Positions 15,201-37,690 of a stretch of 64,000 bases of DNA are shown here, piece after piece. Numbering within the stretch: the first letter of the stretch is position 1; every line of letters begins with the position of its first letter. The DNA lies in NCBI GenBank assembly GCA_047495785.1, contig JBLDXI010000002.1, positions 496,001 through 560,000 of the forward strand, read 5' to 3'. A program made the translations under genes and the position numbers. Source of the stretch: Lepidodermella squamata. Its lineage: Eukaryota; Animalia; Gastrotricha. A model generated the notes under the pieces. The model searched no databases. It saw only the letters and a program-made list of their open reading frames with translations, and was not told the DNA's origin.

Positions 15201-18200
15201 TCGTTTGCTTTATTCCTCTCAGGCGAAAGCTCTGGAGATATCGAAATTGAAAATGTCGGAACAGCTGTTGAGGCGTAGCATGTTGCTGCTGTATTAGCTG
15301 AAACTTTCAGGAAAATATGAGTCTCGTTATCGTCTAGCCACGCAATATCCGGTGGTAGTGGCTGGGTTGAAAAGGCTTGGCGCGACGATACTCTGCTCTC
15401 CCTATATTCACTTTCGCAGTCATTTCCAATTCCAGGTTCATTAGGGTAGGCTTTCAATAAGGTTCGAATGGCGACATTGAAGGTGCAACCAGGGGCAGCG
15501 TTGTCGATATTCATTATCATGGAACCATTTCCCCTGTCAAGGTCGACACTCTGCTGAGCGGATGTTCTGATACTCTTCTGGTTGATCGCGAGCCTATTCT
15601 GATTAGCCAAGTTCTCTGTAGGTTTTGACCAGTCGACGTAATCGACTTGGAAAATAGATACGTCGTACAGCAATGATTCTGATGTTACTTTGAGACAGTT
15701 GCCTCCGTCTTTCCATACCACTTCTACGGTAACATTCACCACCCTATTCTTCTCGAGTATGATTTCTTCAAGCAAGGTAAAATCATCGACTGAAAACGAA
15801 GCAGGGACCGGGTCTGAAATGAAAAGGATTGAAGAGGACATTCAAAAAATTCCATTGTGCTTACCTGTAACTAGAACTAAGGCTTGATCGGTGAAAGAGG
15901 ACGTTGGAACGGTTGATATATCCACGATTGGCCTTGCTTGGACTTTGAAGTAGCAACCAGGTTGTTTGGGTGGTATGTCTAGCTTCGCAATTGGAAAATC
16001 GGTTGAAACCTCAGTCCTGGCAATGACGTCCCCAGTTAGATAACCAACTGCTCTCACTTCATACTTCAAGGGGGAAAACGACCAACTTTCACCATCATTA
16101 AGGTTGGATGAGAAATACTTGTAATGAAACTTCGTATTGATGGCATCGTTAAATCCGATTTGGTACTGCGTTTCGCTTTCTCCCAGAAGCAACGTGACTG
16201 ATCTGTCGAATTTGGGCGCGACTGTGAATGTTTTCACTGTTGAGACGGTTTGTTCATCCGGGCCGAATTTAGCTTTGACATCCAATATTAATCTGTACGA
16301 TAAGCCGGGCGTATCTTTAGGCAGCTGATACTCGGCAAAAGTGATCGTGGTATCAGTTACAACTGGCGTATTGACGGTAGAATCCGACGAGCGTATATAA
16401 ACACTGTAAACTAGTTTGTAATCGAGACCGTCGACAGTCAGGCAATTATAAGGGTCATTCCAAGATACTTGAATAGAACTTGGACCTGATGAACTGTCAA
16501 TAACTTTGATTCTGATTTCATTAATGTTGATTGGAAGGGGAGGAGTCATAACGTTATCGGATCTCACTGCTGTTGCAGATTTCGTGCCACGATAAGATGA
16601 CTCGACTTCGGCGTGATAAATGCATGCTCCCTTCTTGTTGACTGTGGCGACGTAGTCGAAAATGTTCACCTGGCTAGGGGCGAGATGGCCTACGTTCACT
16701 ATATTATCAATCAGAGAAGTCATTTGTCGGTATTTGAAGTCGTAAATCAGGTCTTCCGAGATACGGTTAGCTGTGCTTGAATCCTCGACCGACAGCAAAA
16801 GTTGGCCAGAGTCTTTCCCAGCTGTCGTTAGTAGGACTTTTTGAACTTTAACCGGTCGAACGGGATATTCCTTGCTCACAGCCATAGCACTTGTATATGG
16901 CTGACTTCTGAAAATAGGTTCGACTTTGGCCATGTAAGAAGTCGCTCCGGCAAGGCTCGGCTTCGAGAACTCAACTCTCTTCGCTTCATCGATCCGCCTT
17001 ATCTCCTTGACAAGCGAAGGAACTTCAACACCCGCTGCGTCTGTTATCGAAACTCGATAGCCATCAAGAGCGGCATTTAGCAAATCTTGGCAATTAAGCG
17101 TGTCCTCAAATGTTACTGTTATCTTCGTAGGCGGATTATCTTGCACTGCCATGAGAACATTTGTGACTGGAACTGGCCTCGTGAAGTAGACGTAGTCGTC
17201 GGGAGACAGCCCTTCCTCACCGTCGTAGGTAACCGAAGACTTCATGCGGTATCTACAGGCACCGGGATACGCTGTTGATTTTTCAATCTTAAAAGCTGTG
17301 TAGACGTAACCAGAGAAAATGAATGGCTTGATATCGATTTCCCTCTTTTCCGGCTCTGTTAGTTTGATTTGGTATTTGAACGACTTAAGCGCATTAACAG
17401 GATCTTTCCTGTTGCTCAAATTGATGTCGTCGATAATGGAGAGGGTGAAGTTAGAGTCACTTTCTTCAGCAGTTTCATCAGGGTAGAATAGGGCACTAAC
17501 CGGTTTGGTGGTCAGGAATTTCGAGGCCGCTATAGCCAAAGACCGTTCCTTGCTGGTAATTACTTGGACATGTATTGCATACTGAGTAGCCGGTGCCAAG
17601 TCTAACGGCAAATTCGCCTCTAGGCTTCCGCCGTTGATGATCAAATTTGAGAACGAACGAGGAACTTCGATAGCATTACCCTCCCCAATGACATTGATGA
17701 GGTAACTCATCTCAGCTCGGTTCGATTCGAGGCAATTATTCGAGTCGATCCATTTCACTTTGATGTTATGTGGATTTTTCAAATTGTTGACAGCAACTAA
17801 TTCCGCTGAAACTTCGGAAACAGCCTTTGGGTTTGTTGCAAATGCCTGCCTTTCTGATTCCGCCGGTTTTGCTGAAGTACCTTGATACATTACTGTCGCG
17901 CTGACGTAGTACTGGCAAGCTCCTGCCTTCGGAAAGTTCTTAACTCTATCCACATCGAGTTCGAAGGTAATTTTTCTCGTTGGTAGACCGTTAATAGGAT
18001 CTGTCGTGTAGAACGGAATAACTGCCGCCTGATTCTCGAAAAAATTCAGCTGATAAGTTAGGCCAGTGATATCGCCATTGACTTTGTCTTCAACAACGAA
18101 AGTTAACATGGCACCAATGCTTGAGTGGGCTATGCTTTGAGGAGCAACAGGATTAGTGGTTATCACTGCTTTCTCAGATACCGCACTGTCAGATTCCGAA

Positions 18201-20220
18201 ATTACTTTAACAGCAACTGAGTACCTTGCAGCAGGCAACAACTCGACAAACGCATCGGCGGTGAATGGATCGGCATCCAACATTGGATGGATTTGACTCT
18301 CGATAGAATAATCCCCTTGCCCTTCGCGAGAAATTACGGCAAAGAACTTCAAAAGTTGAGCGCAATTATTCGGGTCCATCCATTTCACTTTGATGTTGTG
18401 TGGATTGTTGAATCCTTCAAAAGGAACAAATTCCGCGGAAACTTCGGATACAGCCTTCGGGTTCGTTGCAAATACCTGCCGGTCTGATTCCACAGGTTTA
18501 GTTGAAGCATCTTGATACAGCACAGTCGCGCTGACGTAATATTGACAAGCTCCAGTCTTCGTAAAGTTACCAATTTCATCCACATCGAGTTCGAAGGTCA
18601 TTTTTCTTGTTGGTAGACCGTTGATAGGGTCTGTTGTGTAGAATGGAACTTCGGTAGTCTGATTCTCGAAGAATTTCAGCTGATAAATAAGGCCGGTGAT
18701 ATCGATATTAATCTCGTCCTCAACGACAAACGTTAACACGGGACCATTGGCTGAGAAGGTGATTCTTTGCGGAGCAACGGGATTTGTGATCAACTCAGCT
18801 CGCACTGCAGAAACCGCATCATCAGATTCCGAAGTTACTCTTACAGCAACTGAGTACCTTGCAGCAGGTAACAAATCGACGAATGCCTCGGCAGTGAACG
18901 GATAAACGCCTAGAATTGGGAAAAGTTGAATCACAACAGGATCACCATCTTGCACTTCTCGTGATAAAATGGCAAAGAAGTTGAGAAGTGGAGCGCAGTT
19001 CGCTGCGTCAGTCCAGCCGATGGATAAGGTATGTTTGCTCCCAACAGCCTTATCGATAGCCACGGAAACGTTTTCAACCGGGTTCGGACGAGTGAGGAAC
19101 CTAACACTTGGGTGCGGCTTAGAAATTAGAGTTGTCGGCCCATCTAACGTTGATCTCCGATAGCGGCGGAATGACTCGGGCTCAGGTTCAACAGGCGGTT
19201 CAGAAGTTGCTGCTTCAGTTGCAGTTGTTTCGGCCTCAGTTGTCGCTTCAGTAGTAGTAGTTTCATCGTTTCCTTCAGTAATATGCTCGGTCACAATCCC
19301 ATCAGTCTCAAGTTCAGTCGTTGTTTCCACGTAGATTGTGGTCGCCTGTGTTGTTGTTGTCGTGAAGGGCTCAATAGTCTTGGTGTATACCGTTGTAACA
19401 TCCAGGTAGAAAGTGCACGCTCCGCTCTCTATGGCGACTTTCTCACTAATTGGTTGTCCATCAGTTGAAGCGGCGACGTACGTTTCCTTGAAAACCGATA
19501 GACCAGTGGTTGTGACTGTTGAAAAGACTAGATGGTAAGTCAGATGAGCTCGATCAAAGTTGAACGGGTCTTCGATGTTGATTTTCGCGATGGATGTACC
19601 TTCGACTTGAACTTCGACTTTTTTCGGTGGAACAGGGGCTAAGAAACAGTTGATGAAAGAACATTTCTATTGAAATCGCAATTGAAGTTTACCTGTCATG
19701 AAGGTGTTGCTTTCGAGTGAAAGATCAACATCGCGACTCGTTTTAGGGATTTCGATCGGCGAAATTTTCAGGCGATGGCTGGAAGACGGTTTCAAACTAA
19801 TGACAAGACTAGCAGTGAATTTCGAGTCTGATTCATTAGATTCCAGCAGCGTCGTGTTCAGTATATATGATGGCGAGTCTTTGTTGTACATTTCCCATTC
19901 TCCATTATTCTCTTGGTATATTTCGGCCTTCACCAATTCATTAAGGCACTTGGACGTATCGTCGCCTCTCGCTCTCTGCCACCATTTTAAATCTATGTGC
20001 TGGAGTTCAGTGAATTCCTGATCGCTTGAAGATGCGTTGACATTCAAGTTTGTTGCCTCAAGGTACCAAGTTTCTAAATTGATGGGAGAATATTAATAGC
20101 AACTCGTAATTTACATGAGCCAAGTGTACCTTTTGGGCAATTTGACAATTCCAGCTCAGCCGTGACATCTTTTGCAACGAACAGTAGTAAAATCGTTGCG
20201 AATCGAAAGGCTAATTTCAT
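12295..20220 (-). CDS. Receptor protein tyrosine phosphatase A (~2516 aa; signal peptide, FN3-like repeats, TM, single PTP domain, R3-like architecture); exons 20220-20130, 20073-19693, 19638-15865, 15813-14569, 14513-13892, 13840-12487, 12429-12357, 12305-12295
   Basis: Signal MKLAFRFATILLLFVAKDVTA; FN3-type LLPAARYSVAVRV and LAPATQYAIHVQV; TM LFLVIVLCASIGGVLLLLVIAAGGFVFY followed by RRRRR; KNRY, DYINAS, YIACQGP, WKD, VHCSAGVGRTG, MVQTVEQF. The last small exon is less certain. Confidence 0.92.
15841..17380. repeat. Near-identical duplicated block shared by PTP-A and PTP-B (copy at about 24226-25765, offset 8385)
   Basis: Identical translation and identical antisense ORFs (16137/24522, 16841/25226, 17087/25472); the adjoining intron is also identical. 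Confidence 0.9.
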
Positions 20221-20961: not shown

Positions 20962-23900
20962 CTATTCTTCATCCCATTCGGAGTCGCTGTTCTGCAGGGT
21001 GTTATCACACGACGAAGCGGGTAAAGATTGCGCATCGACAGGCGGTGCATTTGCATAAATCGTCCGACTCGCCCGTTCAGCCTCACTTGGGGCGCTTTCG
21101 CGGAACCCTTGAAGCCCTGATAACACAAAGGCTGTCGCTCCGTGGAGGAAGCAGAACTGTTCAACCGTCGGAACCATGCACATCCTAGCCCGTCGCATAT
21201 GCGCGATAATGTTGGACAAAGACGGTGCAAATTTCGGCAGAATAGGCAATGGTTGATGAGGATTTTCACGCCATTTCAAGTCAGCTATCAGCCAATGTCT
21301 GACGGCAATGTCCAAGGCAATGAAAACGCCGGTTCGACCAACGCCAGCTGAGCAGTGCACAACCATGGGGCTTTCGCGGCTTATTTCTTGGTTGATTTGG
21401 CACCTAGCAACCATTTCCAGCAAGTCAATCAGTTGGGTGATTTGAGGGACACTGCGGTATTTCCACTCCAGGAATTGGAAATGTTTCACGATTCTGGACT
21501 GGCCAGTGCTCACGTTAGTGACGCGTAGAAGTGTTTGCCGAATAGTATCCGTTGGACTGGGCCCGATCAAATCAGAACCTGAGGCAGATTCAACATGTTG
21601 ACCCTCGCTCTTCGTAATCGGACCTAAGTTCTCGACATCGAACTGCTGGCCTGATGAAATCTGCACGCAAGTTTGGTGCTGGCCTGTTACAGTTGGGTAA
21701 TATTGGTCGCATTTAATCCGGCCGTTTTCGATGAAAGAGGTTAGCATGACGATTATATCAGCCTTCTGCTGCCAGATCATAAGCCAGAAATCTCCGGTTG
21801 TGTTCGGCTTTGGACCCTGACAGGCGATGTAAGATTGAGATATAATCTCAACATCCTCGGCTCCACCAGCTTTGCTTCCAGCTGGCTTCATTCTTATACC
21901 CTATTGCATGATGTTGAGAAGAGGATAGCCAAGTAGCGTACTATTTACTTACTTTGATATAGGAGGCATTTATGTAGTCATCAGACGGGTTGCTTCCAGC
22001 TGAGTTCACGAAAAGTCTCACCCTCGAATGATTGTAAGGTATGATGTCTTTGTAGCGATTTTTCGGCCTAGCCTCGCGAGTAGTTCCATCGGAATTCGGC
22101 TGGTCTCTCCCGATTGGAGTGAGGGCGTGGTATGTGTCATGAAGCTCAGCGTACCCGCTTTCTTGAGCTTGCCGCACGTATTCAACAAACTCTTCCACCG
22201 TCATTTCGCTGTTGGAAATAACAGAAATCGACGAGCTGTTGAAATAGCATTGAGGATTGTTTAGAGAAATTTCGAAAAAATACCTGCGGCGTTTTGGCTG
22301 GGGCTTCAGCTCAATCTGCGTCGGTTGAATTTGAGCAGTCGGTTTTGGAACTTCCTCCGTGGCAATTTTGGCCTCCGGTCGTCTTCGCCGGCGGTAGATG
22401 ACGAACCCCCCTGCTGCAATTACGAGAAGTAGTAGTACACCGCCAATGGATGCGCACAGTACAATAACCAGAAATAAATCATCTACTGGTTTGTAAGACA
22501 CCAAAGTTTCAGTCACTACAGCCGGTTCGTTCCAGGTACCGGATCCAGCGAGAATATCGTCTGATGTTCCATTACTCTCAGGGGATGAGGCAAGGCCAAC
22601 GCCTACACTTCCACTCAAAAAGGTTGCTTCACCCAGGACTTCGTTTGAGACCAATATAGGGATCGAATATTGCCCATCTGCCACGGCATGGTAGAAAGAA
22701 GTCAGTTCGGTCCTCTTGAACATTTTTTCCTCCACCACTTTACACGAGTCCATTTCTTTGGACTTGCATGCAAATACAGAGCATTTGTAGCTGATTCGCT
22801 CGCTCCCCGGACAGTTGGTAGTGTCCACGAAGGAGAACAGAACCTCTGTCGTATCTTCATCTGAATTTCTGAATGAAATCGTCACATTTGTCACGTCCTC
22901 CGGAGCTGTGAAAAGAAAAAAGTGAATTGTGAAGTCAAACAACAAAAACTTACCTATGACAAATTCGTTAGAACTGAGGGTTGGATCTGACCGCTCGTAG
23001 ACGTTTTGTGATATCTGCCTGTGTCTCGTAGCAACTTGAGCTCGATAGGAGCAACCCGGTTTGAGAAGCGACCGTGAAACAACCAACGTTAACTTCTGAT
23101 CCTTGGTACTCGATATCGAATCCTTCGCATTGATAATGGCATCCGAGCTGTAGCAAGATACATCCTTGAAACTATTCGTTAGAACAGATGTGTTACTCTC
23201 TCGCTCCAAAATATCGACACAATGACTGAGATGGTCTCCGCTATCTATACAATTTTTCCGGTCCTGCCATGATACAGCTATGTATGTATTCGATAAGTTA
23301 GGAAAAAGAATGGCCTTGTTTTCGTCTGATCTATCGATCCGAGTCTTAACGCCTTCGACGGGTTCGAATTCAGTTTCATACCGGCGCTTCATAGCTTTCG
23401 AAGTTTTGCCCTTGTTGGTTTTAGTCGTCGCTTCGACGTTGTAGATGCAGCCACCCATTTTGTATTTATCGAACGTGACGAGGCCAACTAAGCTATACAA
23501 CCTCGTTTCGGGATCTTGCTCCAGCTGGTATTTTACAGAGTCACGTTCCTGAGTCTTGGATGAAGTTTCGCTGCTACGGCCCTCATCATTTGCTTTATTC
23601 GTATCAGGCGAAAGGTCGGGAGCTAGAGAAATTGAAAATGTCGGAACAGCTGTTAAGGCGTAGCAAGTGGCTGCTGTATTGGCCGAAACTTTCAGGAAAA
23701 TATGAGTCTCGTTATCGTCTAGCCACGCAATATCTGGTGGTAGTGGCTGGGTTGAAAAGGCTTGCCGTGACGATACTGTGCTCTCCCTATATTCACTTTC
23801 GCAGTCATTGCCAATCCCTGGTTCGTTGGGGTAGGCTTTCAGTAGAGTTCGAATGGCGACATTGAAAGTGCAACCAGGGGCAGCGTTGTCGATATTCATT

Positions 23901-26900
23901 ATCGTGGAACCATTTCCCCGAACAAGGTCAACACTCTGCTGAGCGGATGTTCTGATACTCTTCTGGTTGATCGCGAGCCTATTCTGATTAGCCAAGTTCT
24001 CTGTAGGTTTTGACCAGTCGACGTAATCGACTTGGAAAATAGATACGTCGTACAGCAAGGATTCGGATGTAACATTGAGACAGTTGCCTCCATCTTTCCA
24101 CACCACTTCTACGGTAACATTCACCACCCTATTCTTCTCGAGTATGATTTCTTCAAGCAAGGTAAAATCATCGACTGAAAACGAAGCAGGGACCGGGTCT
24201 GAAATGAAAAGGATTGAAGAGGACATTCAAAAAATTCCATTGTGCTTACCTGTAACTAGAACTAAGGCTTGATCGGTGAAAGAGGACGTTGGAACGGTTG
24301 ATATATCCACGATTGGCCTTGCTTGGACTTTGAAGTAGCAACCAGGTTGTTTGGGTGGTATGTCTAGCTTCGCAATTGGAAAATCGGTTGAAACCTCAGT
24401 CCTGGCAATGACGTCCCCAGTTAGATAACCAACTGCTCTCACTTCATACTTCAAGGGGGAAAACGACCAACTTTCACCATCATTAAGGTTGGATGAGAAA
24501 TACTTGTAATGAAACTTCGTATTGATGGCATCGTTAAATCCGATTTGGTACTGCGTTTCGCTTTCTCCCAGAAGCAACGTGACTGATCTGTCGAATTTGG
24601 GCGCGACTGTGAATGTTTTCACTGTTGAGACGGTTTGTTCATCCGGGCCGAATTTAGCTTTGACATCCAATATTAATCTGTACGATAAGCCGGGCGTATC
24701 TTTAGGCAGCTGATACTCGGCAAAAGTGATCGTGGTATCAGTTACAACTGGCGTATTGACGGTAGAATCCGACGAGCGTATATAAACACTGTAAACTAGT
24801 TTGTAATCGAGACCGTCGACAGTCAGGCAATTATAAGGGTCATTCCAAGATACTTGAATAGAACTTGGACCTGATGAACTGTCAATAACTTTGATTCTGA
24901 TTTCATTAATGTTGATTGGAAGGGGAGGAGTCATAACGTTATCGGATCTCACTGCTGTTGCAGATTTCGTGCCACGATAAGATGACTCGACTTCGGCGTG
25001 ATAAATGCATGCTCCCTTCTTGTTGACTGTGGCGACGTAGTCGAAAATGTTCACCTGGCTAGGGGCGAGATGGCCTACGTTCACTATATTATCAATCAGA
25101 GAAGTCATTTGTCGGTATTTGAAGTCGTAAATCAGGTCTTCCGAGATACGGTTAGCTGTGCTTGAATCCTCGACCGACAGCAAAAGTTGGCCAGAGTCTT
25201 TCCCAGCTGTCGTTAGTAGGACTTTTTGAACTTTAACCGGTCGAACGGGATATTCCTTGCTCACAGCCATAGCACTTGTATATGGCTGACTTCTGAAAAT
25301 AGGTTCGACTTTGGCCATGTAAGAAGTCGCTCCGGCAAGGCTCGGCTTCGAGAACTCAACTCTCTTCGCTTCATCGATCCGCCTTATCTCCTTGACAAGC
25401 GAAGGAACTTCAACACCCGCTGCGTCTGTTATCGAAACTCGATAGCCATCAAGAGCGGCATTTAGCAAATCTTGGCAATTAAGCGTGTCCTCAAATGTTA
25501 CTGTTATCTTCGTAGGCGGATTATCTTGCACTGCCATGAGAACATTTGTGACTGGAACTGGCCTCGTGAAGTAGACGTAGTCGTCGGGAGACAGCCCTTC
25601 CTCACCGTCGTAGGTAACCGAAGACTTCATGCGGTATCTACAGGCACCGGGATACGCTGTTGATTTTTCAATCTTAAAAGCTGTGTAGACGTAACCAGAG
25701 AAAATGAATGGCTTGATATCGATTTCCCTCTTTTCCGGCTCTGTTAGTTTGATTTGGTATTTGAACGACTTCAAAGCATTATCAAGCTCTTTTCTGTTGC
25801 TCAGATTAATGTCGTCGATAACGGAGAGAGGGAAGTCGATGTCAGTCTCTTCAGCAGTTTCATCAGGGTGGAATAGGGCACCAACCGGTTTGGTTGTCAG
25901 GAATTTCGAGGCCGCTATAGCCAAAGACTGTTCCTTGCTTGAGACAGCTTGAACATGTATTGCATACTGAGTAGCCGGTGCCAAGTCTAACAGCAAATTT
26001 GCCTCCAGGGTTTCGCCGGTGATGATCAAATTTGAGAACGAACGAGGAACGTCGATAGCATTACCCTCCCCAATGACATTGATGAGGTAACTCATCTCAG
26101 CTCGGTTCGATTCGAGGCAATTATTCGAGTCGATCCATTTCACTTTGATGTTATGTGGATTTTTGAACTTGTTGACAGCAACTAATTCCGCCGAAACTTC
26201 GGATACAGCCTTTGGGTTTGTTGAAAATGCTTGCCGTTCTGATTCTGCCGGTTTTGTTGAAGTACCTTGAGTAGCTAAAGTCACCGTAGCGCTGACGTAG
26301 TACTGGCAAGCTCCAGTCTTCGTAAAGTTCTTAATTTGATCCACATCGAATTCGAAGGTAATATTTCTTGATGATTTGCCGATAATAGGATCTGTCGAGT
26401 AGAACGGATCAACTGCCGCGGGATCCTCGAAAAACTTTAGCTTATAGGTTAGACCGGTGACGTCGCCATTGACTTTGTCCTCAACAACGAAGTTCAACAC
26501 CGAACTAATGCTTGAGTATTCGATTCTCTGCGGAGCAACGGGTACAGTCAGCAATTCATTCTTTGCTTTGGAAGTCGCATTTTCGCCAGATTCCAAGGTT
26601 ACTTTTAAAGTAACTGAATACCTTGCAGCAGGTAACAAATCAAGAGAAGTTTCAGCTACAAACGAATTCACATCTTGGCTTGGATGAATTTGCAATTCAA
26701 CAGATTCCCCTTGCCCTTCTCGCGAAAGGATAACAAATGACTTGAGAAGCGGAGCGCAATTATTTGTGTCCATCCATTTCACTTTGATGCTGTGTGGATT
26801 CTTGAAATTTTCAAAACTGATCAATTCCGCTGAAACGTCAGACACAGCCTTCGGGTTTGTTGAAAATGCCTGCCGTTCTGATTCTGCCGGTTTAGTTGAA

Positions 26901-29093
26901 GCACCTTGATACAGCACAGTCGCGCTGACGTAGTATTGGCAAGCTCCTGCCTTCGGAAAGTTCTTAATTAGATCCACATCGAGTTCGAAGGTAATTTTTC
27001 TTGATGATAGACCGTTAATAGGATCTGTCGAGTAGAACGGAACAACTGCCGTCTGACTTTCGAAAAACTTCAGCTGATAAGTTAGACCGGTGACGTCGCT
27101 ATTGACTTTGTCTTCAACGACGAAAGTTAACATTGCACCACTGCTTGAGTGGGCTATGCTCTGAGGAGCAACAGGATTAGTGGTTATCACTGCTTTCTCA
27201 GATACCGCACTGTCAGATTCCGAAATTACTTTAACAGCAACTGAGTACCTTGCAGCAGGTAACAACTCGACAAACGCATCGGCGGTGAATGGATCGGCAT
27301 CAAACATTGGATGGATTTGTGTCTCGATAGAGTAACCCTCTTGCCCTTCGCGAGATATGACGGCAAAGAATTTGAGAAGCGGAGCGCAATTATTTGTGTC
27401 CATCCATTTCACTTTGATGCTGTGTGGATTATTGAAATTTTCAGAACTGATCAATTCCGCTGAAACGTCAGACACAGCCTTCGGGTTTGTTGAAAATGCT
27501 TGCCGTTCTGATTCTGCCGGTTTTGTTGAAGTACCTTGATACAGCACAGTCGCGCTGACGTAGTATTGGCAAGCTCCAGTCTTTGGAAAGGTACCAATTT
27601 GATCTACATCGAGTTCGAAGGTCATTTTTCTTGTTGGTTGCCCGTTAATAGGGTCTGTTGTGTAGAATGGAACTTCGGTAGTCTGGTTCTCGAAGAATTT
27701 CAGCTGATAAATAAGGCCGGTGATATCGATATTAATCTCGTCCTCAACGGCAAAAGTTAACACGGGACCATTGGCTGAGAAGGTGATTCTTTGCGGAGCA
27801 ACGGGATTTGTGATCAACTCAGCTCGCACTGCAGAAACCGCATCATCAGATTCCGAAGTTACTCTTACAGCAACTGAGTACCTTGCAGCAGGTAACAAAT
27901 CGACGAATGCCTCGGCAGTGAACGGATAAACGCCTTGAATTGGGAAAAGTTGAATCACAATGGGATCAACATCTTGCACTTCTCGTGATAGACTGGCAAA
28001 GAATTTGAGAAGTGGAGCGCAATTTGCTGCGTCAGTCCAGCCGATGGATAAGGTATGTTTGCACCCAACGACCTTATCGATAGCCACGGAAACGTTTTCA
28101 ACCGGTTTCGGACGAGTGAGGAACCTAACACTTGGGTGCGGCTTAGAAATAAGAGTTGTTGGCACATCATTCGCTCTGTTCTTCGTGTATACCGCTGTGA
28201 CATCCAGGTAGATTGTGGTCGCCTGTGTTGTTGTTGTCGTGAAGGGCTCAATAGTCTTGGTGTATACCGTTGTAACATCCAGGTAGAAAGTGCACGCTCC
28301 GCTCTCTATGGCGACTTTCTCACTAATCGGCTGTCCATCAGTTGAAGCGGCGACGTACGTTTCCTTGAAAACCGATAGACCAGTGGTTGTGACTGTTGAA
28401 AAGACTAGATGGTAAGTCAGATGAGCTCGATCAAAGTTGAACGGGTCTTCGATGTTGATTTTCGCGACGGATGTACCTTCGACCTCAACTTCGACTTTCT
28501 TCGGTGGACCAGGGGCTGAGAAACACTTAATCAAAGAAAATGTGCTGTAAGCAATTGAAATTTACCTGTTATGAAGGTGTTGCTTTCGAGTGAAAGATCA
28601 ACATCGCGACTCGTTTTAGGGATTTCGATCGGCGAAATTTTCACGCGATAGCTGGAAGACGGTTTCAAACTAATGACAAGACTAGCAGTGAATTTCGAGT
28701 CTGATTCATTAGATTCCAGCAGCGTCGTCTTCAGTATATATGATGGCGACTCTTTGTTGTACATTTCCCATTCTCCATTAATCTCTTGGTATATTTCGGC
28801 CTTCACCAATTCATTAAGGCACTTGGACGTATCGTCGCCTCTCGCTCTCTGCCACCATTTTAAATCTATGTGCTGGAGTTCAGTGAATTCCTGATCGCTT
28901 GAAGATGCGTTGACATTCAAGTTTGTTGCCTCAAGGTACCAAGTTTCTAAATTGATGGGAGAATATTAATAGCAACTCATAATTTACATGAGCCAAGTGT
29001 ACCTTTTGGGCAATTTGACAATTCCAGCTCAGCCGTGACATCTTTTGCAACGAACAGTAGTAAAATGGTTGCGAATCGAAAGGCTAATTTCAT
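20962..29093 (-). CDS. Receptor PTP-like protein B (~2608 aa), predicted catalytically impaired; exons 29093-29003, 28946-28566, 28515-24250, 24198-22954, 22905-22284, 22235-21953, 21900-20962
   Basis: Tandem paralog of A. VHCSAGVGRTG is intact, but the WPD loop reads WKY and the Q loop reads MVPTVEQF. Confidence 0.92.
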
Positions 29094-29349
29094 ATCCCGA
29101 TAATTTCCAATGAGCGATTCACACACGAAGCTGCCTTTGGCAATATTTGATTACAATTAAGGTGTCGTAGTTTCTTTACTGCAACGCGGAGAAAAAACAA
29201 ACAGATAGGAACTTCCAAGAACTAAGATAAAGTCATTCCCTGAACTGTTTGTCGTAAAGCAGGCGTGCCGTTTGCTATGGGCATGGTCTCACTTCTTTGC
29301 AAGTTATCATTACGCCAGTTTATTTTCGTCGTTACAACCCGATATATTG

Positions 29350-29760
29350 TATCAAACGATTTTCAAACACAGTGGCAAAATAGAATTACAATTCATCAAA
29401 TGCAGCGCTTTGCGGCGATTATGAGTATTCACGCAGATAAGAACCGTTCCGTGAAGAGAAGAAAATAGCTTCGACGCTGAGTTTACATCATTTGTTTGGA
29501 CTAGATCAAAGGTCAGACGCTTGTGTTGTCTTATTTTCAGCTTTTTTGTCGTTACACCCATTTGCATGGTTTTTTTGCAATAATTCTCGTTTTATTCTAA
29601 GAAAAGCTTATCTTATCACTTGCGAATTTCCAGGAATAAGCTATCGTAAGTTTTTTCACAGTGACGCTGGAACATTTGGCTGAGCTCCGGCTGCTGAAAC
29701 TCGAAAAATGAATTGAATCCATCTCAATAGTAAAATGAATTGGATTTCAACTTATTCAAG
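29350..29760. repeat. Duplicated upstream region, matching the PTP-C 5' flank at about 37720-38150
   Basis: Shared non-coding text, e.g. gataagaaccgttccgtgaagagaagaaaatagctt and tttattctaagaaaagcttatcttatcacttgcgaatttccaggaataagc through aaaatgaattggatttcaa. Confidence 0.85.
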
Positions 29761-30856
29761 TACCATACTACTGTCACGGTTGGCTCTCTCGGAAATTTTT
29801 TGAAAAATTTGAAAAAATTGGTTTATCCATATTGAGAATTTTCTCTATCCAACGATATAAAATTTGTTGGGTAAATAATTTATATCGATTTTCCGATTTT
29901 TCCGGCCGTGCATATTGGACCACCACGGTCCATCATGAGACCGAGTAAAATGTAAAATAAATAAAATGGGGAGTTGAAGATAAGGGGTGGGACAAGCCAC
30001 GCTAATCCTGGCTTGGGTAATTAAATTAGTAGATAATAAAATCGCTGAAATGTAATGCTGGCACCGGGCCAGTATGTAATTTTAAAGGGTAGTGCTAAAA
30101 GATTGAGAGAAGTTGTAAAAAAATAGAGAAAAAGGCACGTGCAAATAAAAAATTCAAATATAGTCGTGAAAGGAAAGTGCATTGCACTCAGTAACTTCAG
30201 TTCATTTGGTACCAACAACAAGGCATGCATTTTCAGAACGAGAAAATTGCTTCCCCCTTGCATTTTCACAATTTTTAGCTCGCTCAGCTTAATGCTTAAT
30301 TAACCTTCAGTCCGAGCCTTTAATATCTGCGAAGAGCATTAATTAGCGATATATTTACACAGGCACTTCAAAGTTGCTCGATTTCGTTAAGGGTGAACAA
30401 AGAATTCTGCGTCGGCCCAAGTAAGGTAGCATAGAATTCAAATCGGAGCTGCAAAACCTGCGAAATTTCCTGCGCGCTTTCTCAAAATTTTCCGCTAGTT
30501 TTGACCCATTTCTGGCTGCTGTTGCTGGCCTGCTCTAAACAGAAGTCTGGAAAAGCGCGTTGTATCGTCATTTTCTGGAAGTTTTGGAGCTAATTATAGT
30601 TGTAAATCCGAAAAATGCAGCATTTATGCTTTTTATAGCTTTCGAGCGAGGATGAAGCAAGAATGTTTCGAGAAGAATGACAGCTTTAGCCTTGGTTGTA
30701 AAAGAAGTTATTCCAAGATTTAAGATATTTATCCACACTGTTTCAATTCCAACCACTGATTTCGCTCGCGGTGTTACAATTCGTTGTTTCGTAGCATTCC
30801 TGCTCCACAACTATCACTATGTGAGAGGAAAATTCTGAAAGCAAAAAAGTGAGACT

Positions 30857-30900
30857 GAAAGCACCGACTATGAAAGCACCGACTATGAAAGCACCGACTG
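30857..30900. repeat. 15-bp tandem repeat GAAAGCACCGACTAT x3
   Basis: Read directly from the sequence. Confidence 0.85.
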
Positions 30901-31043
30901 GTTTATTTGAACTGAAAAATGCGAGCGACGAATGCGCAAGCGAAAATTTGGATGAATCCCCCTTTCGGCGAAAAGCCTACTTCCTTCACTGATTGGCGTG
31001 TTCAACAAATCAAAATCCACTGACAGGATTTTGCAGCCCCAGT

Positions 31044-31927
31044 CAGGGCCGGATTAACGCATGGGCTTGGAGGGCTGAAGCCCAGGGGCCGCCAGTGTAA
31101 AGGGCCGCCAGCGTAGACTGAAAAGCCAATTTTTACGTACTCATACAATTCGAGACACCCAAGTTTAATAGCTGTGGCCATTGGATATTTTTAGCTCTTG
31201 GAGAAGCTAAATAATCAAAAATTTTGCTCGCTTCGCTCGCGATACTTCTTCATTATTCGATAACTTTCAGGAGCCTAATTCGCCAAATATGTGGCATTTC
31301 TGACAAATCAAATGTTATGGCCCTCATTGCTTGACTTTTATAGCATTTAAAATCCGAGATCTCTACAGTTTCCACGATTACGCAGATACTGTTTGGTATA
31401 GTTGAGTTCACGAGCGCACAAAAATGGGAAATTATGTTTCGAACGCGTCATTTTTAGACAGTTTCTACCTTAAAATCAAAAGAAATATCGTCAGCTAAAG
31501 CTCGCTTCGCTCGCGGTAAAGAATTAACCATAAATAGTGACATGATAATTCGCCGAAACCAGATGCGCGGTTTGCCATTAGGGAGCTTTCCATCGCATTC
31601 ATCTTTGAGCGTTTACTATATTGCTCTAGCTATAATAGTGGCTTAGACTGAAGGCGCCCACCTCAGTGTACCCATTCCCCGCTGAAAAATGTTGAAAAAT
31701 TTAAGCATTACTGATATTTAAAATAAATATTTACGTTTAAACACCAATGTCTTAAGGAAAACAATGCATAACACCAATAACACCAATAAGTAGTCACTAT
31801 TGCTTGGCGAGTGTCCTAAAAATTAAAACTTAAAATTCTACCTTTCATCTTTTTTCAGAAATTCATAAAAAATGGGGCCGCCAAACGTCAAGAGCCCATG
31901 GGCCGCCGGAGGGTTAATCCGGCCCTG
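31044..31927. mobile_element. Non-autonomous hAT-like element (884 bp)
   Basis: 15-bp perfect TIR CAGGGCCGGATTAAC / GTTAATCCGGCCCTG; 8-bp TSD GCCCCAGT (31036-31043, 31928-31935); internal CTCGCTTCGCTCGC motifs. Confidence 0.9.
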
Positions 31928-32229
31928 GCCCCAGTCAGCATATGAATCGCGGACTTCTAAATTATAAAGCTGGTTTTTGGAGGTTCGATTGATTCATCAC
32001 TAGAATGTCAATTTTACTTTATTAGCAACAATAAAAAGAAAGCGATGACTCAGAAATAAGCCTTAGAACTCTCCAAGCTACAAAACAGTGAAAAATAATG
32101 TATCTCAAGCGGAATATCTCACATGATTTACACCGAATAATTTTACACAGAAAGACAGTGTGACGAAAATATCAAACATTCAGCAGTTCAACGAAAAGTA
32201 ATCTTCAGCTTGAATCTCGAAGCCTTAAT

Positions 32230-35200
32230 CTATTTTTCATCCCATTCGGAATCGCTGTTCTGCGGGGTGTTATCACACGACGAAGCAGGTAAAGATTGCG
32301 CATCGACAGGCGGTGCATTTGCATAAATCGTCCGACTCGCACGTAGTTCGGCCTCACTTAGGGCGCTTTCGCGGAACCCTTGAAGCCCTGATAACACATA
32401 GGCTGTAGCTTCATGGAGGAAGCAGAACTGTTCAACCGCCGGGACCATGCTCATCCTAGCCCGTCGCATATGCGCGATGATGTTGGACAAAGACGGCGCA
32501 AATTTCGGCAAAATAGGCAATGGTTGATAGGGATTTTCTCGCCATTTCAAGTCAGCAATCAACCAATGTCTCACGGCAATGTCCAAGGCAATGAAAACCC
32601 CGGTTCGACCAACGCCAGCCGAGCAGTGCACAACCATGGGGCTTTCGTGGCTTATTTCTTGGTTGATTTGGCACTTTGCAACCATTTCCAGCAGGTCAAT
32701 CAGTTGGGTAACTTGAGGGACGCTGCGGTATTTCCATTCGAGGAACTGGAAATGTTTCACGATTCTAAATTGGCCAGTGCTCACGTTAGTGACGCGTAAA
32801 AGTGTTTGCCGTACAGTATCCGTTGGACTGGAACCGATTGAATCCGAACCTGAGGCAGATTCAACATGTTGACCCTCGCTCTTCGTAATCGGACCTAAGT
32901 TCTCGACATCGAACTGCTGGCCTGATGAAAACTGCACGCAAGTTTGATGCTGGCCTGTTACAGTTGGGTAATATTGGTCGCATTTAATCCGGCCGTTTTC
33001 GATGAAAGAGGTTAGCATGACGATTATATCAGCCTTCTGCTGCCAGATCATAAGCCAGAAATCTCCGGTTGTGTTCGGCTTTGGACCCTGACAGGCGATG
33101 TAAGATTGAGATATAATCTCGACATCGTCGGCTCCACCAGTTTCGTTTGGTGGAGGCTTCATTCTTATACCCTATTGCATGAAGTTGAGAAGAGGATAGC
33201 CAAGTAGCGTACTATTTACTTACTTTGATATAGGAGGCATTTATGTAGTCATCAGACGGGTTGCTTCCAGCTGAGTTCACGAAAAGTCTCACCCTCGAAT
33301 GATTGTAAGGAATGATGTCTTTGTAGCGATTTTTCTGCCTAGCCTCACGAGTCATTCCTTCTGTATTGGGCTGTTCCTTTCCAACAGCTGACAGAGTTTG
33401 GTAGACATCGCGGACCTCAGCGTATCCATTCTCTCTAGCTCGCCTCACAAACTCAGGGAATTCCTCAGCCGTCATTTCGCTGTTCGAAATGACTGAAGCG
33501 GAAGAGCTGTATAAAAGAATAAATAAAAATTCTGAATAATTTTGAATAAAATTACAAACCTCCTCCGTATCGTTCCGATTTGATCCAGCTGAATTTCAGC
33601 TGTGGCATTGAAGCCTCCCGCCGGGTACTTAAGTCGCTGTCTTCTTCGGTAAAGTACAAAGCCACCAACTGCTATAATGAGGAGTAAGATGGCTCCACCC
33701 AGTGATAGACAAATAGCAATTATCAAAGATTGGTCGTCATCTGTCTTGAGAGGAATAAGAGCCTCTTGCAGTGCTATTGGGTTGTACCAAAAACTAGATC
33801 CGGCGATAATCTGGCCCTGTGATCCACCGTGAGGTAATGGTGCAAGGCCGACTCCAACACATCCGCTCAGATATTGGGCATCATTGAGGAATCGATTTGG
33901 TACCATAATGTTAGCTTTGTTATAATAATTTAGTTCTGACCTCGTGAATGTTCTTGACTCCACTGCATTGCATGAACCTATAGCACTAGACCTACATGCG
34001 AATATCACGAATTTGTAGCTGACTCGCTGGCTTTGTGGGCAATAGTAATAGTCATTGAAGGAAAACTGGACTTCCGTTTCCTGATCATACATTTTCCGGA
34101 TCGAAATCCTTACAGAATTGACATCCTCTGGAGCTGTAAAGCGTTTGAATAGCATTTATATAATTATTTAGGCTTTGGTATTTTTCAGTCAATAAACCTA
34201 CCAATTACAAATTCATTAGAGCTGAGTGTTGCAGCTGTTTCGTCGTAGAGGCCATCAGAACTCCGCATGCGTCTCGTAGTAACTTGGGCTCGATAACTAC
34301 AACCAGGCTTGGGAGAACCCCTAAATACACTTTCCAGCGACAGATCTTTGGTACTTGATATCGACTCTTGTGTATCGACAACAGCATCAGAGCTGTAACA
34401 CTCCTTGAATCTATCCGTTACTACTGAAACGTCTCCCTCCTGATTAAATATGTCAACACAGTGAACCAGACGTCGTCTATTATCGAGGCAATTATATCGA
34501 TCCTGCCACGCCACTGCTATCGTTGCTGTGGATTTATCGGCCAAAGCGATGACATTATTTTTATCAGCCTTGTTTATCCGGGTCCAAACGCCCTCCACAG
34601 GTCTAATTTCAGTCTGGAATCTACGACTTACAGCTTTCGAAGTTTTGCCATCAGCCGTTCGAGTCGTTGCTTCGACGTTGTAAATACACCCACCCGATTT
34701 GTATTTATCAAACGTGACCTGTCCAGCCAAGCTATATAACTTCGTAACAGGATTTTGCTCCAGTTGGTATTTAATAGAATTACGTTCCTGAATTAGGTTG
34801 CTGCGGCTATTTTCGTTATTCAAATCAGGCCAAAAATCCGGATAAATGGAAATAGAAAATGTCGGAACAGCTGATGGGGTGTAACAGGTTGCCGCTGTGT
34901 TAGCTGTTACTTTCAAGTAAATACCAGTCCTATCGTCGTTCAACCACGCAATCTCGGGTGGCAATGGTTGCGTTGAGAAGGCACGTCTGGAAACTACCTC
35001 ACTCTGCCTGTAATCGCTTTCGCAGCTATTTCCTATACCAGGTTCGTTGGGATACGGTGCTAGCAAAGTTCGAATCGCGACGTTAAAGGCACATCCCGGG
35101 GCAGCGTTTTCAACCCTAACTCCAGCTAAGGCAGTTCCAAGTTGAAGATCCACGCTTTCTTCAGCTGAAATCTTTATTTCTTCCATTTTCCTGGCCACTC

Positions 35201-37690
35201 TTGCCTGGCTTACCGGGTTCTCGGTTTGTTTTGACCAGTCGATGTAATCATTTTGATAAATTGTGATTTCGTACAGAAGGGATTTTGCTACGACCGTGAG
35301 ACAGTTTCCGCCGTCTTTCCAAACGACATCAACCGTAACATTGGCCGCGGCATCATTAGTTATTTCCACCACTTCAAATTCGCCCCCAAGAAAAGAAACA
35401 CCCCTCGGGTCTGAAAATCCATGATTAGATAAATAAAGAGAAAAATGATTTGAAAATACTTACTGGTGATGAGAACTAAGGATTGGACTGTAAAGTTGGA
35501 CGCTTCAGCGGTGGATATGTCCACAATGGGCCTTGCTTGGACTTTGAAGTAGCAACCAGGCTTATTTAACGGTATGTTAAGATACGCAAGCGGCAAATCC
35601 GCAGAAGCTTCGGCCATGGCAATCAAATCCTCAGTTTGATAATCAACGGCTCTCACTTCATACTTCAATGGCGAAAACGACCAAAAATTGCCATTATTGA
35701 CACTTGGTGAGTAATGAAACTTCGCATTGACATCATCCTTTAGCCCGATTTGATACTGCTTGCTCGTTTCTCCCAGAAGCCGCGTGGTCGATCGATCGAA
35801 CTTGGGAGCTATTGTGAATGTCTTCACTACTGAAGCAGTCTGCCTGTCCGTACCGAAGATGGCTTCAACTTCAAGAATCAATCTGTAAGATAGGCCTGGT
35901 TTATCGTCTGGTAGTTGATACTCGACCGTTTTTGCCGCGATTCCGCTCGCAACGATTTTGCTCTCAATAGAATCCGATGGGGCGAGAAAAACGTTGTACA
36001 AAACGTAGAAATCTCGAGAGCTAACCGAATCGCAATTTTCCGAGTCCTCCCAAGAAACGGCAATGAAATATCGTCCTGATGACTTGCTGAATACTTCGAT
36101 TGCAATTGAGCTCAGGCTGATTGGAAAAGGCGGGGTCATAACGATATCGGATTTGACTGTTGTCGCTGATTTTGTGTCAAGGTAAGAAGACTCGACTTCG
36201 GCCTGGTAAATGCATGCACCACTCTTGTTAACCGCTGTGGCGTAGTCGAAAATGTAAACTCGTCCCTGTCCAAGTTTGTCTGCTTTCACCACACTTTCAC
36301 CCTCAGGAGTCAGTTGCAAGAATTGTAAGTCGTAGTTAAGCTGTTCCGAAATTCGTTTGGCAGTGATTGATTCCTCGACCGAAAGCAAAAGTTGGCCAGA
36401 ATCTTTTCCAGCCAGTGTGAGAAGGACTTTCCCAACCTCAGATGGTCGCAAATCGGGATTTGTGATCAACTCAGCTCGCACTGCAGAAACCGCATCATCA
36501 GATTCCGAAGTTACTCTTACAGCAACTGAGTACCTTGCAGCAGGTAACAAATCGACGAATGCCTTGGCAGTGAACGGATAAACGCCTTGAATTGGGAAAA
36601 GTTGAATCACAATGGGATCAACATCTTGCACTTCTCGTGATAAAATAGCAAAGAATTTGAGAAGTGGAGCGCAATTTGTTTTGTCAGTCCAGCCGATGGT
36701 TAAGGTATGTTTGCTCCCAACAACCTTATCGATAGCCACGGAAACGTTTTCTACCGGGTTCGGACGAGTGAGGAACCTAACACTTGGGTGCGGCTTTGAA
36801 ATTAGAGTTGTCGGCCCATCATTCGCTCTGTTCTTCGTGTATACCGCTGTGACATCCAGGTAGAAAGTGCACGCTCCGCTCTCTATGGCGACTTTCTCAC
36901 TAATCGGCTGTCCATCAGTTGAAGCGGCGACGTACGTTTCCTTAAAAACCGATAGACCAGTGGTTGTTACTTTAGACAAGACGAGATGGTAGGTCAGATG
37001 AGCTCGATCAAAGTTGAACGGGTCTTCGATGTTAATTTTCGCGATGGAGGCACCTTCGACCTCAACTTCGACTCTCTTCGGTGGAACAGGGGCTGAGGAA
37101 CAGTTAATTCAAGAATACCTCTCATGAAGAATGGAAATGGAATTTACCTGTCATGATCGTGTTGCTTTGTAGTGAAAGATCGACCTCGCGAATAGTTTTC
37201 GAAATTTCAATCGGCGAAATGTTCACACGGTAACTGGAAGCCGGTTTTAAACTTATGACAAGACTAGAAGTGAATCTCAACACATCCGAATCTGATTCAT
37301 CGGGTTTCAGCCGCTCCGTCTTCAATATAAAGGACGGCGAGCCTTTGTTGTATATTTCCCATTCTCCATTATTTTGTTGGTAAATTTCGGCCCTCGCAAG
37401 ATCTGTAAGGCACTTGGACGTATCGTCGCCGCCCGCTCTCTGCCACCATTTTAAATCTATGTGCTGGAATTCAGTGAATTCCTGATCGCTTGAAGATGCG
37501 TTGACATTCAAGTTTGTTGCCTCAAGGTACCAAGTTTCTAAATTTATGGGAGAATATTAGCAACTCATGAGTATTAAGGTCAAACACAATTTATCCAACC
37601 TTTCGGGCAATTCGACACACCTAACTGAGCAATAACATGTTCAGCAAAGACAAGTAAGACAATCTTTGCGAGTTGACCCTCGAATTTCAT
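32230..37690 (-). CDS. Receptor PTP-like protein C (~1705 aa, shorter ectodomain), predicted catalytically impaired; exons 37690-37600, 37537-37148, 37092-35464, 35410-34202, 34133-33560, 33506-33224, 33171-32230
   Basis: Signal MKFEGQLAKIVLLVFAEHVIA; TM LIIAICLSLGGAILLLIIAVGGFVLY; KNRY, VHCSAGVGRTG, WKY, MVPAVEQF. Confidence 0.92.

What the first reader, a model, noticed from the sequence alone, without database searches (positions are those of the whole stretch)
20962..33171. Two receptor phosphatases look like natural substrate traps beside one active paralog
Seen: PTP-A has WKD (13114-13122) and MVQTVEQ. PTP-B has WKY (21457-21465) and MVPTVEQ. PTP-C has WKY (32728-32736) and MVPAVEQ. B and C keep the KNRY pTyr loop, a perfect HCSAGVGRTG and open frames. 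Established: the WPD Asp (PTP1B D181) is the general acid and the Q-loop Gln (Q262) positions the hydrolytic water; D181A and D181A/Q262A are engineered substrate-trapping mutants. Inference: B and C bind or shield pTyr substrates instead of dephosphorylating them. With near-identical ectodomains on A and B, this would be a paired-receptor system where the same ligand gives eraser versus protector outputs.
Basis: partly seen in the sequence, partly recalled or inferred. Interest (0 to 1): 0.85.

Follow-up and report, generated by a model that had tools for sequence, protein, structure and literature searches.

The report
Two catalytically crippled receptor phosphatase paralogs
Three neighbouring genes of a small-intron animal encode cell-surface tyrosine phosphatases; one keeps the catalytic residues, while two intact, selectively maintained copies have lost exactly the two residues that chemists remove to make substrate traps, so they probably bind rather than remove phosphate, as known receptor pseudophosphatases such as human PTPRU do.

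Summary
Three tandem minus-strand genes (A 12346-20220, B 20962-29093, C 32230-37690) each encode a signal peptide, an FN3-like repeat ectodomain, a TM helix and one classical PTP domain.

- **Catalytic residues.** A has WKD and MVQT. B and C have WKY and MVP(T/A). All three keep KNRY and HCSAGVGRTG. The Tyr and Pro replace two residues invariant in 60 active PTP domains.
- **Not pseudogenes.** The roughly 2600- and 1700-codon frames are open with conserved 48-68-nt GT..AG introns. B versus C gives dN/dS of 0.16-0.22 (p about 1e-9). cDNA contigs cover the WKY-type exon.
- **B is a recombinant.** It is A-like (93% aa in the ectodomain, with a 1670-nt identical tract) up to the KNRY codons and C-like (94% aa) after them.

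So catalytic impairment is well supported by homology. "Substrate trap/protector" and "paired receptor" remain untested inferences. The principle is already known (PTPRU versus PTPRK, IA-2, D2 domains, EGG-4/5). No orthologues were found in any database, and the organism was not identified.

Another first-stage note (s1-384552) described the same mosaic on this stretch. Unchecked notes report other PTP pseudophosphatases elsewhere in this genome.

Verdict: a real, moderately interesting new variant of a known kind.

The parts
12346..20220 (-). Gene A, 2535 aa. Exons 20220-20130, 20073-19693, 19638-15865, 15813-14569, 14513-13892, 13840-12346. Signal peptide, FN3-like repeats, TM 14005-14085, one PTP domain 12745-13809 in a single exon.
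   Evidence: ORFs; splice model; Pfam PF00102 E=6e-59; AF2 model pLDDT 85.5; Foldseek to PTPRO/VE-PTP/DEP-1/PTP1B
13114..13122 (-). A: WKD, with the general-acid Asp kept and Lys in place of the WPD Pro
12796..12816 (-). A: Q-loop MVQTVEQ, both Gln kept
20962..29093 (-). Gene B, 2608 aa. Exons 29093-29003, 28946-28566, 28515-24250, 24198-22954, 22905-22284, 22235-21953, 21900-20962. TM 22397-22477. PTP domain 21106-22204, interrupted by intron 21901-21952. AATAAA at 20770-20775.
   Evidence: intron 22236-22283 is spliced out in a cDNA contig
21457..21465 (-). B: WKY, with Tyr (TAC) in place of the general-acid Asp
21157..21177 (-). B: MVPTVEQ, with Pro (CCG) in place of the Q262-equivalent Gln; second Gln kept
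21328..21357 (-). B: intact P-loop HCSAGVGRTG
22040..22076 (-). Recombination switch in B at the KNRY codons (22052-22063). Informative sites are A-like upstream and C-like downstream.
24102..25771 (-). 1670-nt tract of B identical to A 15717-17386 (ectodomain exon plus an intron): a recent gene conversion
32230..37690 (-). Gene C, 1705 aa. Exons 37690-37600, 37537-37148, 37092-35464, 35410-34202, 34133-33560, 33506-33224, 33171-32230. Shorter ectodomain. TM 33652-33729. PTP domain 32377-33475 with intron 33172-33223. AATAAA at 32018-32023.
32728..32736 (-). C: WKY
32428..32448 (-). C: MVPAVEQ, with Pro for Gln and also Ala for the invariant Thr
32599..32628 (-). C: intact P-loop HCSAGVGRTG

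Best explanation
A, B and C are a lineage-specific tandem family of single-domain, FN3-type receptor tyrosine phosphatases. A keeps every catalytic residue and is probably an active enzyme. B and C carry a derived cytoplasmic domain in which the general acid (Asp to Tyr) and the Gln that positions the hydrolytic water (Gln to Pro) are gone. The nucleophilic Cys, the P-loop Arg, the KNRY pTyr-recognition loop and the second Gln are intact. By homology to PTP1B, their phosphotyrosine turnover should be reduced by orders of magnitude while the phosphate pocket survives. They are therefore receptor pseudophosphatases that act by binding, either by competing with A-type enzymes for pTyr substrates or by regulating A in mixed dimers, and not by hydrolysis. 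B arose by recombination that joined an A-type ectodomain, TM and juxtamembrane region to a C-type dead domain. The locus therefore encodes one ectodomain type with either a live or a dead cytoplasmic module. Shown: the sequences, gene models, mosaic structure, purifying selection and presence in cDNA contigs. Inferred: loss of activity, substrate binging and competition, and shared ligand.
For: Motif positions and alignment to LAR D1. Among 92 columns conserved at 80% or more in 60 active PTP domains, A keeps 70, B 66 and C 65. Of the 100%-invariant columns that separate B and C from A, only the catalytic Asp and Gln differ, plus Thr in C. None of 354 homologous domains has Tyr at the acid position. 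Complete spliced ORFs with conserved splice sites. B versus C in the PTP core: Nd 20 against Sd 32 on 684 and 195 sites, dN/dS 0.16-0.22, binomial p = 1.2e-9. The BC-type stem is about twice as long as the A branch, 0.325 versus 0.15, consistent with a functional shift followed by constraint. A versus BC differences sit preferentially in low-confidence loops (36% versus 19%), and the active-site blocks are unchanged. A run that carries a SMART cDNA adapter and a spliced-out intron covers the WKY-type exon at 90% identity or more, and its cover stops near the poly(A) signal. Mosaic structure. Literature: D181A lowers kcat about 1e5-fold and Q262A about 100-fold, and the double mutant is the preferred trap (PMC10267100). 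The pseudophosphatase PTPRU binds PTPRK substrates (PMC7320164). 'Grab and hold on' is an established view of pseudophosphatases (PMC8269279). Replacing the WPD Pro is activating in PTP1B and SHP2 (PMC13714419), so WKD does not argue against activity of A.
Against: No enzymology or binding data exist. Tyr and Pro are not the Ala of the engineered traps: a bulky Tyr could block loop closure or the pocket, abolishing binding as well. PTP1B D181A/Q262A still turns substrate over slowly and has a peptide off-rate close to wild type (PMC10267100). Some proteins classed as pseudophosphatases from sequence (HD-PTP) have been reported active (PMC8269279). The RNA evidence is from assembled contigs of a run only guessed to be RNA, and it cannot separate B from C or show the level. 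No orthologues were found, so conservation rests on one paralog pair. A's activity is itself unproven, given Lys for Pro in WPD, Tyr for Trp in KCxxYWP and several insertions.
Confidence: 0.6

Rival explanations
1. B and C are still working phosphatases with a changed mechanism or substrate. Possible substrates are phosphoinositides or other small phospho-esters that need no general acid. Alternatively, they are slow, long-lived phospho-enzyme 'timers'.
For: The Cys, Arg, P-loop and second Gln are perfectly kept and the domain is under purifying selection. The closest structural neighbours are R3-type receptors. From my own knowledge, that class includes PTPRQ, which has WPE and acts on phosphoinositides. 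Sequence-defined pseudophosphatases have sometimes proved active (PMC8269279).
Against: Both steps of the classical mechanism are hit at once. There is no acidic residue next to the Tyr (WKYRSVP) to take over. D181A and Q262A each cost orders of magnitude in kcat in PTP1B (PMC10267100).
Confidence: 0.15
2. The dead domain of B and C acts like a D2 domain supplied in trans. B pairs with A through the shared ectodomain, TM and juxtamembrane region, and it modulates or inhibits A without engaging substrates itself.
For: TM to KNRY is 97.6% identical between A and B, and the ectodomain 93%. From my own knowledge, most receptor PTPs carry an inactive D2 with the acid replaced (WPE in 100 of 354 domains here). 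The best sequence matches of A include both D1 and D2 of LAR.
Against: D2 domains typically also lose the KNRY Tyr and keep the Gln, whereas B and C do the opposite. C has a different, shorter ectodomain and TM (58-66% identity), yet carries the same dead domain. No dimerisation data exist.
Confidence: 0.15
3. B and C are young pseudogenes, or assembly duplicates of one decaying copy.
For: They are tandem paralogs with ongoing recombination. B carries more private amino-acid changes than C, 11 versus 3.
Against: 2608- and 1705-codon frames are open with all splice sites intact. dN/dS is 0.16-0.22 with p about 1e-9. There are 52 nucleotide differences between B and C in the core, distinct flanks and poly(A) signals, DNA contigs of an independent run across B, and cDNA cover of the exon.
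Confidence: 0.04

Closest known systems
Human PTPRU versus PTPRK (R2B receptor PTPs; PMC7320164)
   Same: A receptor-type paralog whose membrane-proximal PTP domain is catalytically dead but still binds the substrates of its active paralog. It is proposed to compete with the active paralog. The ectodomains are homologous.
   Different: PTPRU keeps the canonical residues and is inactivated by structural rearrangements. It has tandem D1-D2 domains and is an old vertebrate paralog. Here there is a single domain, the two catalytic side chains themselves are replaced, and the pair was built recently by recombination inside a tandem array.
Engineered PTP1B D181A/Q262A substrate trap (PMC10267100)
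   Same: The same two positions are altered, with Cys215 and Arg221 retained.
   Different: The natural residues are Tyr and Pro, not Ala. The Pro of WPD is also Lys. The binding behaviour is unknown.
D2 domains of tandem receptor PTPs and IA-2/PTPRN (own knowledge; D2 states seen)
   Same: PTP fold kept, acid residue replaced, non-catalytic regulatory roles.
   Different: D2 domains mostly have WPE with the Gln kept, and often lose the KNRY Tyr. IA-2 also alters the P-loop. B and C keep KNRY and a perfect P-loop.
C. elegans EGG-4/EGG-5 PTP-like pseudophosphatases (cited in PMC8269279)
   Same: PTP-like proteins that hold a phosphotyrosine-containing partner without dephosphorylating it ('grab and hold on').
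   Different: They are cytoplasmic and not receptors. No sequence relationship beyond the PTP fold was tested here.
R3-type receptor PTPs (PTPRB/VE-PTP, PTPRJ/DEP-1, PTPRO, PTPRH, PTPRQ)
   Same: FN3-only ectodomain plus one PTP domain. These are the top Foldseek matches of the A model.
   Different: Only 26-31% identity. There are four lineage-specific insertions in the domain. Orthology is not established.
Immune paired receptors (KIR, LILR, SIRP and similar; own knowledge)
   Same: Neighbouring genes whose ectodomains are homogenised by gene conversion while their signalling parts give opposite outputs.
   Different: Those use ITIM versus adaptor-coupled tails, not a live versus dead phosphatase. 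No ligand or immune role is known here, and ectodomain dN/dS is below 1 throughout.

Membership tests
Classical Cys-based PTP domain (Pfam PF00102) | Profile match above the gathering score | tested here: met
   A 199.9 bits; B 155.3 + 32.8 bits on its two exons; C 156.1 bits; cut-off 20.9
Classical Cys-based PTP domain (Pfam PF00102) | HCX5R P-loop and KNRY pTyr loop | tested here: met
   HCSAGVGRTG and KNRY are present in all three
Classical Cys-based PTP domain (Pfam PF00102) | PTP fold | tested here: met
   AF2 model of A: pLDDT 85.5, pTM 0.88. Foldseek TM 0.80-0.88 (normalised to target) to PTP1B and R3 receptors. B and C were not folded, because no single reference spans their intron.
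Catalytically competent classical PTP | General-acid Asp in the WPD loop | tested here: not met
   Not met for B and C (Tyr). Met for A (WKD)..
Catalytically competent classical PTP | First Gln of the Q-loop (PTP1B Q262) | tested here: not met
   Not met for B and C (Pro). Met for A..
Pseudophosphatase | PTP fold with catalytic residue(s) substituted, yet maintained by selection | tested here: met
   Substitutions; dN/dS 0.16-0.22, p = 1.2e-9
Pseudophosphatase | Measured lack of phosphatase activity | not testable with these tools
   Needs recombinant protein assays
Substrate trap (D181A/Q262A-like) | Both trap positions altered with Cys and Arg retained | tested here: met
Substrate trap (D181A/Q262A-like) | Stable, vanadate-competed binding of pTyr substrates | not testable with these tools
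   No binding data. Tyr and Pro may behave differently from Ala.
Paired receptors | Shared ectodomain kept similar by recombination, with divergent signalling part | tested here: met
   A versus B: ectodomain 93.1% aa identity with a 1670-nt identical tract, against 70.9% in the PTP core. The switch is at 22040-22076.
Paired receptors | Same ligand, opposite output, co-expression | not testable with these tools
   Only assembled cDNA contigs were available. B also has an extra repeat module and A a unique insert.
R3-type receptor PTP | Signal peptide, FN3-only ectodomain, one TM, one PTP domain | tested here: inconclusive
   The signal peptide, TM and single PTP domain are clear. The FN3 match is weak (PF00041 E=4e-10 summed, no single stretch above threshold). 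Orthology is not shown.

The most novel reading that the evidence does not exclude
The locus is a phosphatase-based paired-receptor system built by recombination. The same ectodomain (A and B) is coupled either to a live eraser domain or to a dead, pTyr-holding domain. One extracellular cue could then either remove or protect phosphotyrosine on the same substrates. Selection keeps the two cytoplasmic modules apart while the ectodomains are repeatedly homogenised.
Probability: 0.2. Interest if true: 0.7.

Novelty: new variant of a known kind. Interest (0 to 1): 0.45.

Why it matters
Receptor pseudophosphatases are known, but how they arise and what they do is poorly understood. Here nature appears to have made the textbook double trap substitution in a single-domain receptor and kept it under selection. 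By one recombination at the KNRY codons, it then placed that dead domain behind the ectodomain of an apparently active neighbour. If the biochemistry holds, the trio would be a compact natural system for testing the idea that pseudophosphatases compete with their active paralogs, since the live and dead forms differ in only one exchangeable module. If B and C instead prove active, they would show that a classical PTP can work without the canonical acid and Gln.

Tried and rejected
**Orthologue searches**
- Word-indexed search with A's domain: best hits 29-35% identical, all generic RPTPs.
- Exhaustive HMMER search with B's last exon against 1.84 billion representatives: nothing above 49% identity, and none of the best hits I inspected carries WKY.
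- Exact look-up of the B and C exon products: not on record.
- Metagenome scan: only distant PTPs.
- Conservation in other species could therefore not be assessed.

**Organism identification**
- A dynamin-like gene (47132-49153) gave one 62% hit in a Logan assembly (ERR10802333) and no name.
- Names of the best PTP hits are scattered over fish, bivalve, amphipod, hydrozoan and chytrid.

**Technical failures and limits**
- IQ-TREE failed once and then timed out. FastTree was used instead.
- The ESM Atlas was busy twice.
- The complete B and C PTP domains could not be folded, because they span an intron with a stop and have no single reference. Only A was folded.
- Read laying allows one call, so only B (20500-26400) was laid. 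C and A were not, and B and C transcripts cannot be told apart at the 90% threshold used.

**Readings considered and rejected**
- WKD makes A inactive. Rejected because substitutions of the WPD Pro are reported as activating (PMC13714419).
- B and C are pseudogenes. Rejected on frames, splice sites, dN/dS and cDNA cover.
- Positive selection on the ectodomain. Rejected because dN/dS is below 1 in every informative 150-codon window; the one window above 1 (1.38) rests on 5 changes.
Full report
**1. What is there**

The minus strand between about 12.3 and 37.7 kb carries three head-to-tail genes. I call them C (37690 to 32230), B (29093 to 20962) and A (20220 to 12346), in their order of transcription. 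The long ORFs are linked by very short GT..AG introns of 48-68 nt with TTTCAG-like acceptors. These occupy the same positions in the three copies. Joining them gives uninterrupted proteins of 2535 (A), 2608 (B) and 1705 (C) residues.

Each protein has:
- a signal peptide
- an ectodomain of repeated FN3-like modules, recognisable by recurring W.D..NC and GAC.Y motifs, with a weak Pfam fn3 match
- one TM helix
- a short juxtamembrane segment
- a single classical PTP domain, PF00102
- a Ser/acidic tail

tblastn finds only these three PTP domains in the window. One intron, at YIK|GIR inside the PTP domain, is present in B (21901-21952) and C (33172-33223) but absent from A.

**2. The observation**

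The Asp of WKD is therefore the general acid.

I aligned the three domains with 60 active domains (WPD, HCSAG, QT..Q) taken from the retrieved homologues. In 92 columns conserved at 80% or more, A keeps the consensus in 70, B in 66 and C in 65. The WPD Asp and the first Q-loop Gln are 100% invariant in the outgroup and kept in A. In B and C they are Tyr and Pro, and C also has Ala for the invariant Thr. All three share Lys for the WPD Pro, Asn for the Asp of PYDxSRV, and Tyr for the Trp of KCxxYWP.

Among 354 PTP domains (D1 and D2 types) in the fetched proteins, none has Tyr at the acid position. Only two, both degenerate D2-type domains, have Pro at the Gln position. The codons are GAT (A) versus TAC (B, C), and CAA versus CCG.

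**3. Are B and C live genes?**

- **Frames and splice sites.** All frames and splice sites are intact.
- **Selection.** Between B and C, the PTP core after KNRY has 32 synonymous and 20 non-synonymous differences on 195 and 684 sites. This gives dS of 0.15-0.19 and dN/dS of 0.16-0.22. The deficit of replacements has a binomial p of 1.2e-9. That is the same level of constraint as between A and B/C (0.13-0.20).
- **Branch lengths.** In a FastTree of the domain, A, B and C form one clade on a long stem. The BC stem (0.325) is about twice the A branch (0.15). This fits a burst of change after the catalytic residues were lost, followed by constraint.
- **Where the changes lie.** Differences between A and the BC type are enriched in the low-confidence insertion loops of the AF2 model (36% versus 19% of positions). 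The blocks containing QGP/DFW, the WPD-loop flanks and the P-loop are unchanged.
- **Transcription.** One public run (X2, 2015), listed only as "RNA?", has three marks of cDNA. It has a loose end equal to the SMART cDNA oligo. It has a contig that skips exactly 22236-22283 with GT..AG ends. Its cover drops to zero just beyond B's AATAAA. Its contigs lie on 20894-21878, the WKY-type exon, at 90% identity or more. The A-type exon is only about 75% identical there and cannot account for this. C is about 93% identical and could, so the evidence is for B and/or C. Contigs say nothing about level.

**4. The mosaic**

Sliding-window identity of the three genomic copies and informative sites show the pattern. 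B is A-like from its promoter through the ectodomain, TM and juxtamembrane segment up to the KNRY codons. It is C-like from there to the 3' UTR. The switch lies within 22040-22076.

| Segment | A-B aa identity | B-C aa identity |
|---|---|---|
| Ectodomain | 93.1% | 65.8% |
| TM to KNRY | 97.6% | 58.5% |
| PTP core after KNRY | 70.9% | 93.6% |

A 1670-nt stretch, including an intron, is identical between A (15717-17386) and B (24102-25771). At the 7-9% divergence of its flanks this can only be a recent conversion. The gene order C-B-A is what a single unequal crossover between an ancestral C and A would produce (inference). Another first-stage note (s1-384552) described this mosaic, and my analysis agrees with it.

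B is not a perfect copy of A outside the cell. It has one extra repeat module, and A has a unique Thr/Glu-rich insert ending in FRRYRRS.

**5. How it most likely works**

Established enzymology of PTP1B, as summarised in PMC10267100, gives the following:
- D181A lowers kcat about 10^5-fold.
- Q262A lowers kcat about 100-fold by slowing hydrolysis of the cysteinyl-phosphate.
- The double mutant is the preferred trapping reagent.

B and C lack both side chains but retain everything that forms the phosphate and phenyl pocket. The best reading is therefore that they are receptor pseudophosphatases. They would be strongly impaired in turnover and selected for a non-catalytic function that still needs an intact PTP fold and pocket.

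The Lys that replaces the WPD Pro in all three proteins is not a sign of inactivity. P180A in PTP1B and most Pro424 substitutions in SHP2 are activating and favour the closed loop (PMC13714419). A is thus plausibly active. B and C may be biased to a closed, substrate-retaining state (inference).

The sequence cannot tell whether B and C hold substrates, or instead modulate A in mixed dimers. The latter is possible because TM and juxtamembrane regions are 98% identical. Three cautions apply:
- Tyr could sterically prevent loop closure.
- PTP1B D181A/Q262A has a peptide off-rate like wild type and still turns over slowly (PMC10267100).
- Some sequence-defined pseudophosphatases have been reported active (PMC8269279).

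**6. Comparison with what is known**

The A model superposes best on R3-type single-domain receptors (PTPRO/CRYP-2, VE-PTP, DEP-1, PTPRH) and PTP1B, at 26-31% identity. Sequence searches place it equally near LAR and PTPRA-type D1 domains. The architecture is R3-like, but orthology is not shown.

Functionally the nearest precedent is human PTPRU. Its dead D1 binds PTPRK substrates and is proposed to compete with active paralogs (PMC7320164). D2 domains, IA-2 and C. elegans EGG-4/5 ("grab and hold on", cited in PMC8269279) are further precedents. Three things differ here:
- the particular residue solution (Tyr plus Pro, with a perfect P-loop and KNRY)
- the single-domain receptor context
- the recombinational coupling of the dead module to the ectodomain of a live neighbour

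Unchecked notes of this scan (s1-379740, s1-430161) report other PTP pseudophosphatase families elsewhere in the same genome. Such losses may therefore be common in this animal.

**7. Limits**

No orthologue was found in 5.8 billion clustered proteins, 1.84 billion representatives or the metagenome contigs. The organism was not identified. Only B was laid with reads, and the B/C domains could not be folded as single references.

**8. Verdict**

It is a new variant of a known kind, the receptor pseudophosphatase paired with an active paralog. It is of moderate interest and is readily testable by standard enzymology.

Noticed in passing
B 21040-21060; C 32308-32328: The B and C C-terminal tails carry IYANAPP, a YxN motif. 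From memory, it resembles the C-terminal Grb2/Src-SH2 docking tyrosine (YANF) of vertebrate RPTP-alpha. A's longer, Ser/Pro-rich tail lacks it. It may be a docking site specific to the dead-domain receptors.
   Followed up: no
A 19151-19330: A alone has a Thr/Glu-rich, mucin-like insert of about 60 aa in the N-terminal ectodomain. It ends in FRRYRRS, a possible furin-type cleavage site. B has a short unrelated segment there, and B has one extra repeat module of about 210 aa further on (7 versus 6 W.D..NC motifs).
   Followed up: partly
A 13560-13570 versus B 21901-21952 and C 33172-33223: The 52-nt intron at YIK|GIR inside the PTP domain is present in B and C but precisely absent from A. This is an intron loss or gain that marks the two cytoplasmic-module lineages.
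   Followed up: partly
18778-19144, 27802-28212, 36454-36820: A stretch of about 370-410 nt near the 5' end of the ectodomain exon is 95-99% identical in all three genes, although C is otherwise about 65-75% identical. This is a further conversion tract shared by the whole array.
   Followed up: partly
29361-29761 and 37723-38150: The far-upstream region of B resembles the upstream region of C (86%), while the proximal 250 nt upstream of B's ATG is A-like (97%). The promoter region of B is therefore itself mosaic.
   Followed up: no
39981-44342: Three or more tandem, diverged (72-82%) copies of Cys-loop ligand-gated ion-channel gene segments lie on the minus strand (Pfam Neur_chan_LBD and Neur_chan_memb).
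   Followed up: no
47132-49153: An intron-less 673-aa dynamin-family (Mx-like) ORF. Its only close relative in 5.8 billion proteins is a 62% identical ORF in a Logan assembly (ERR10802333). All other hits are 28% identical or less.
   Followed up: partly
45297-46403 (+), 52618-53634 (-), 46679-47079 / 51813-52215: An ankyrin-repeat ORF, a trypsin-like serine protease ORF, and a dispersed repeat of about 400 nt at 88% identity flanking the dynamin-like gene region.
   Followed up: no
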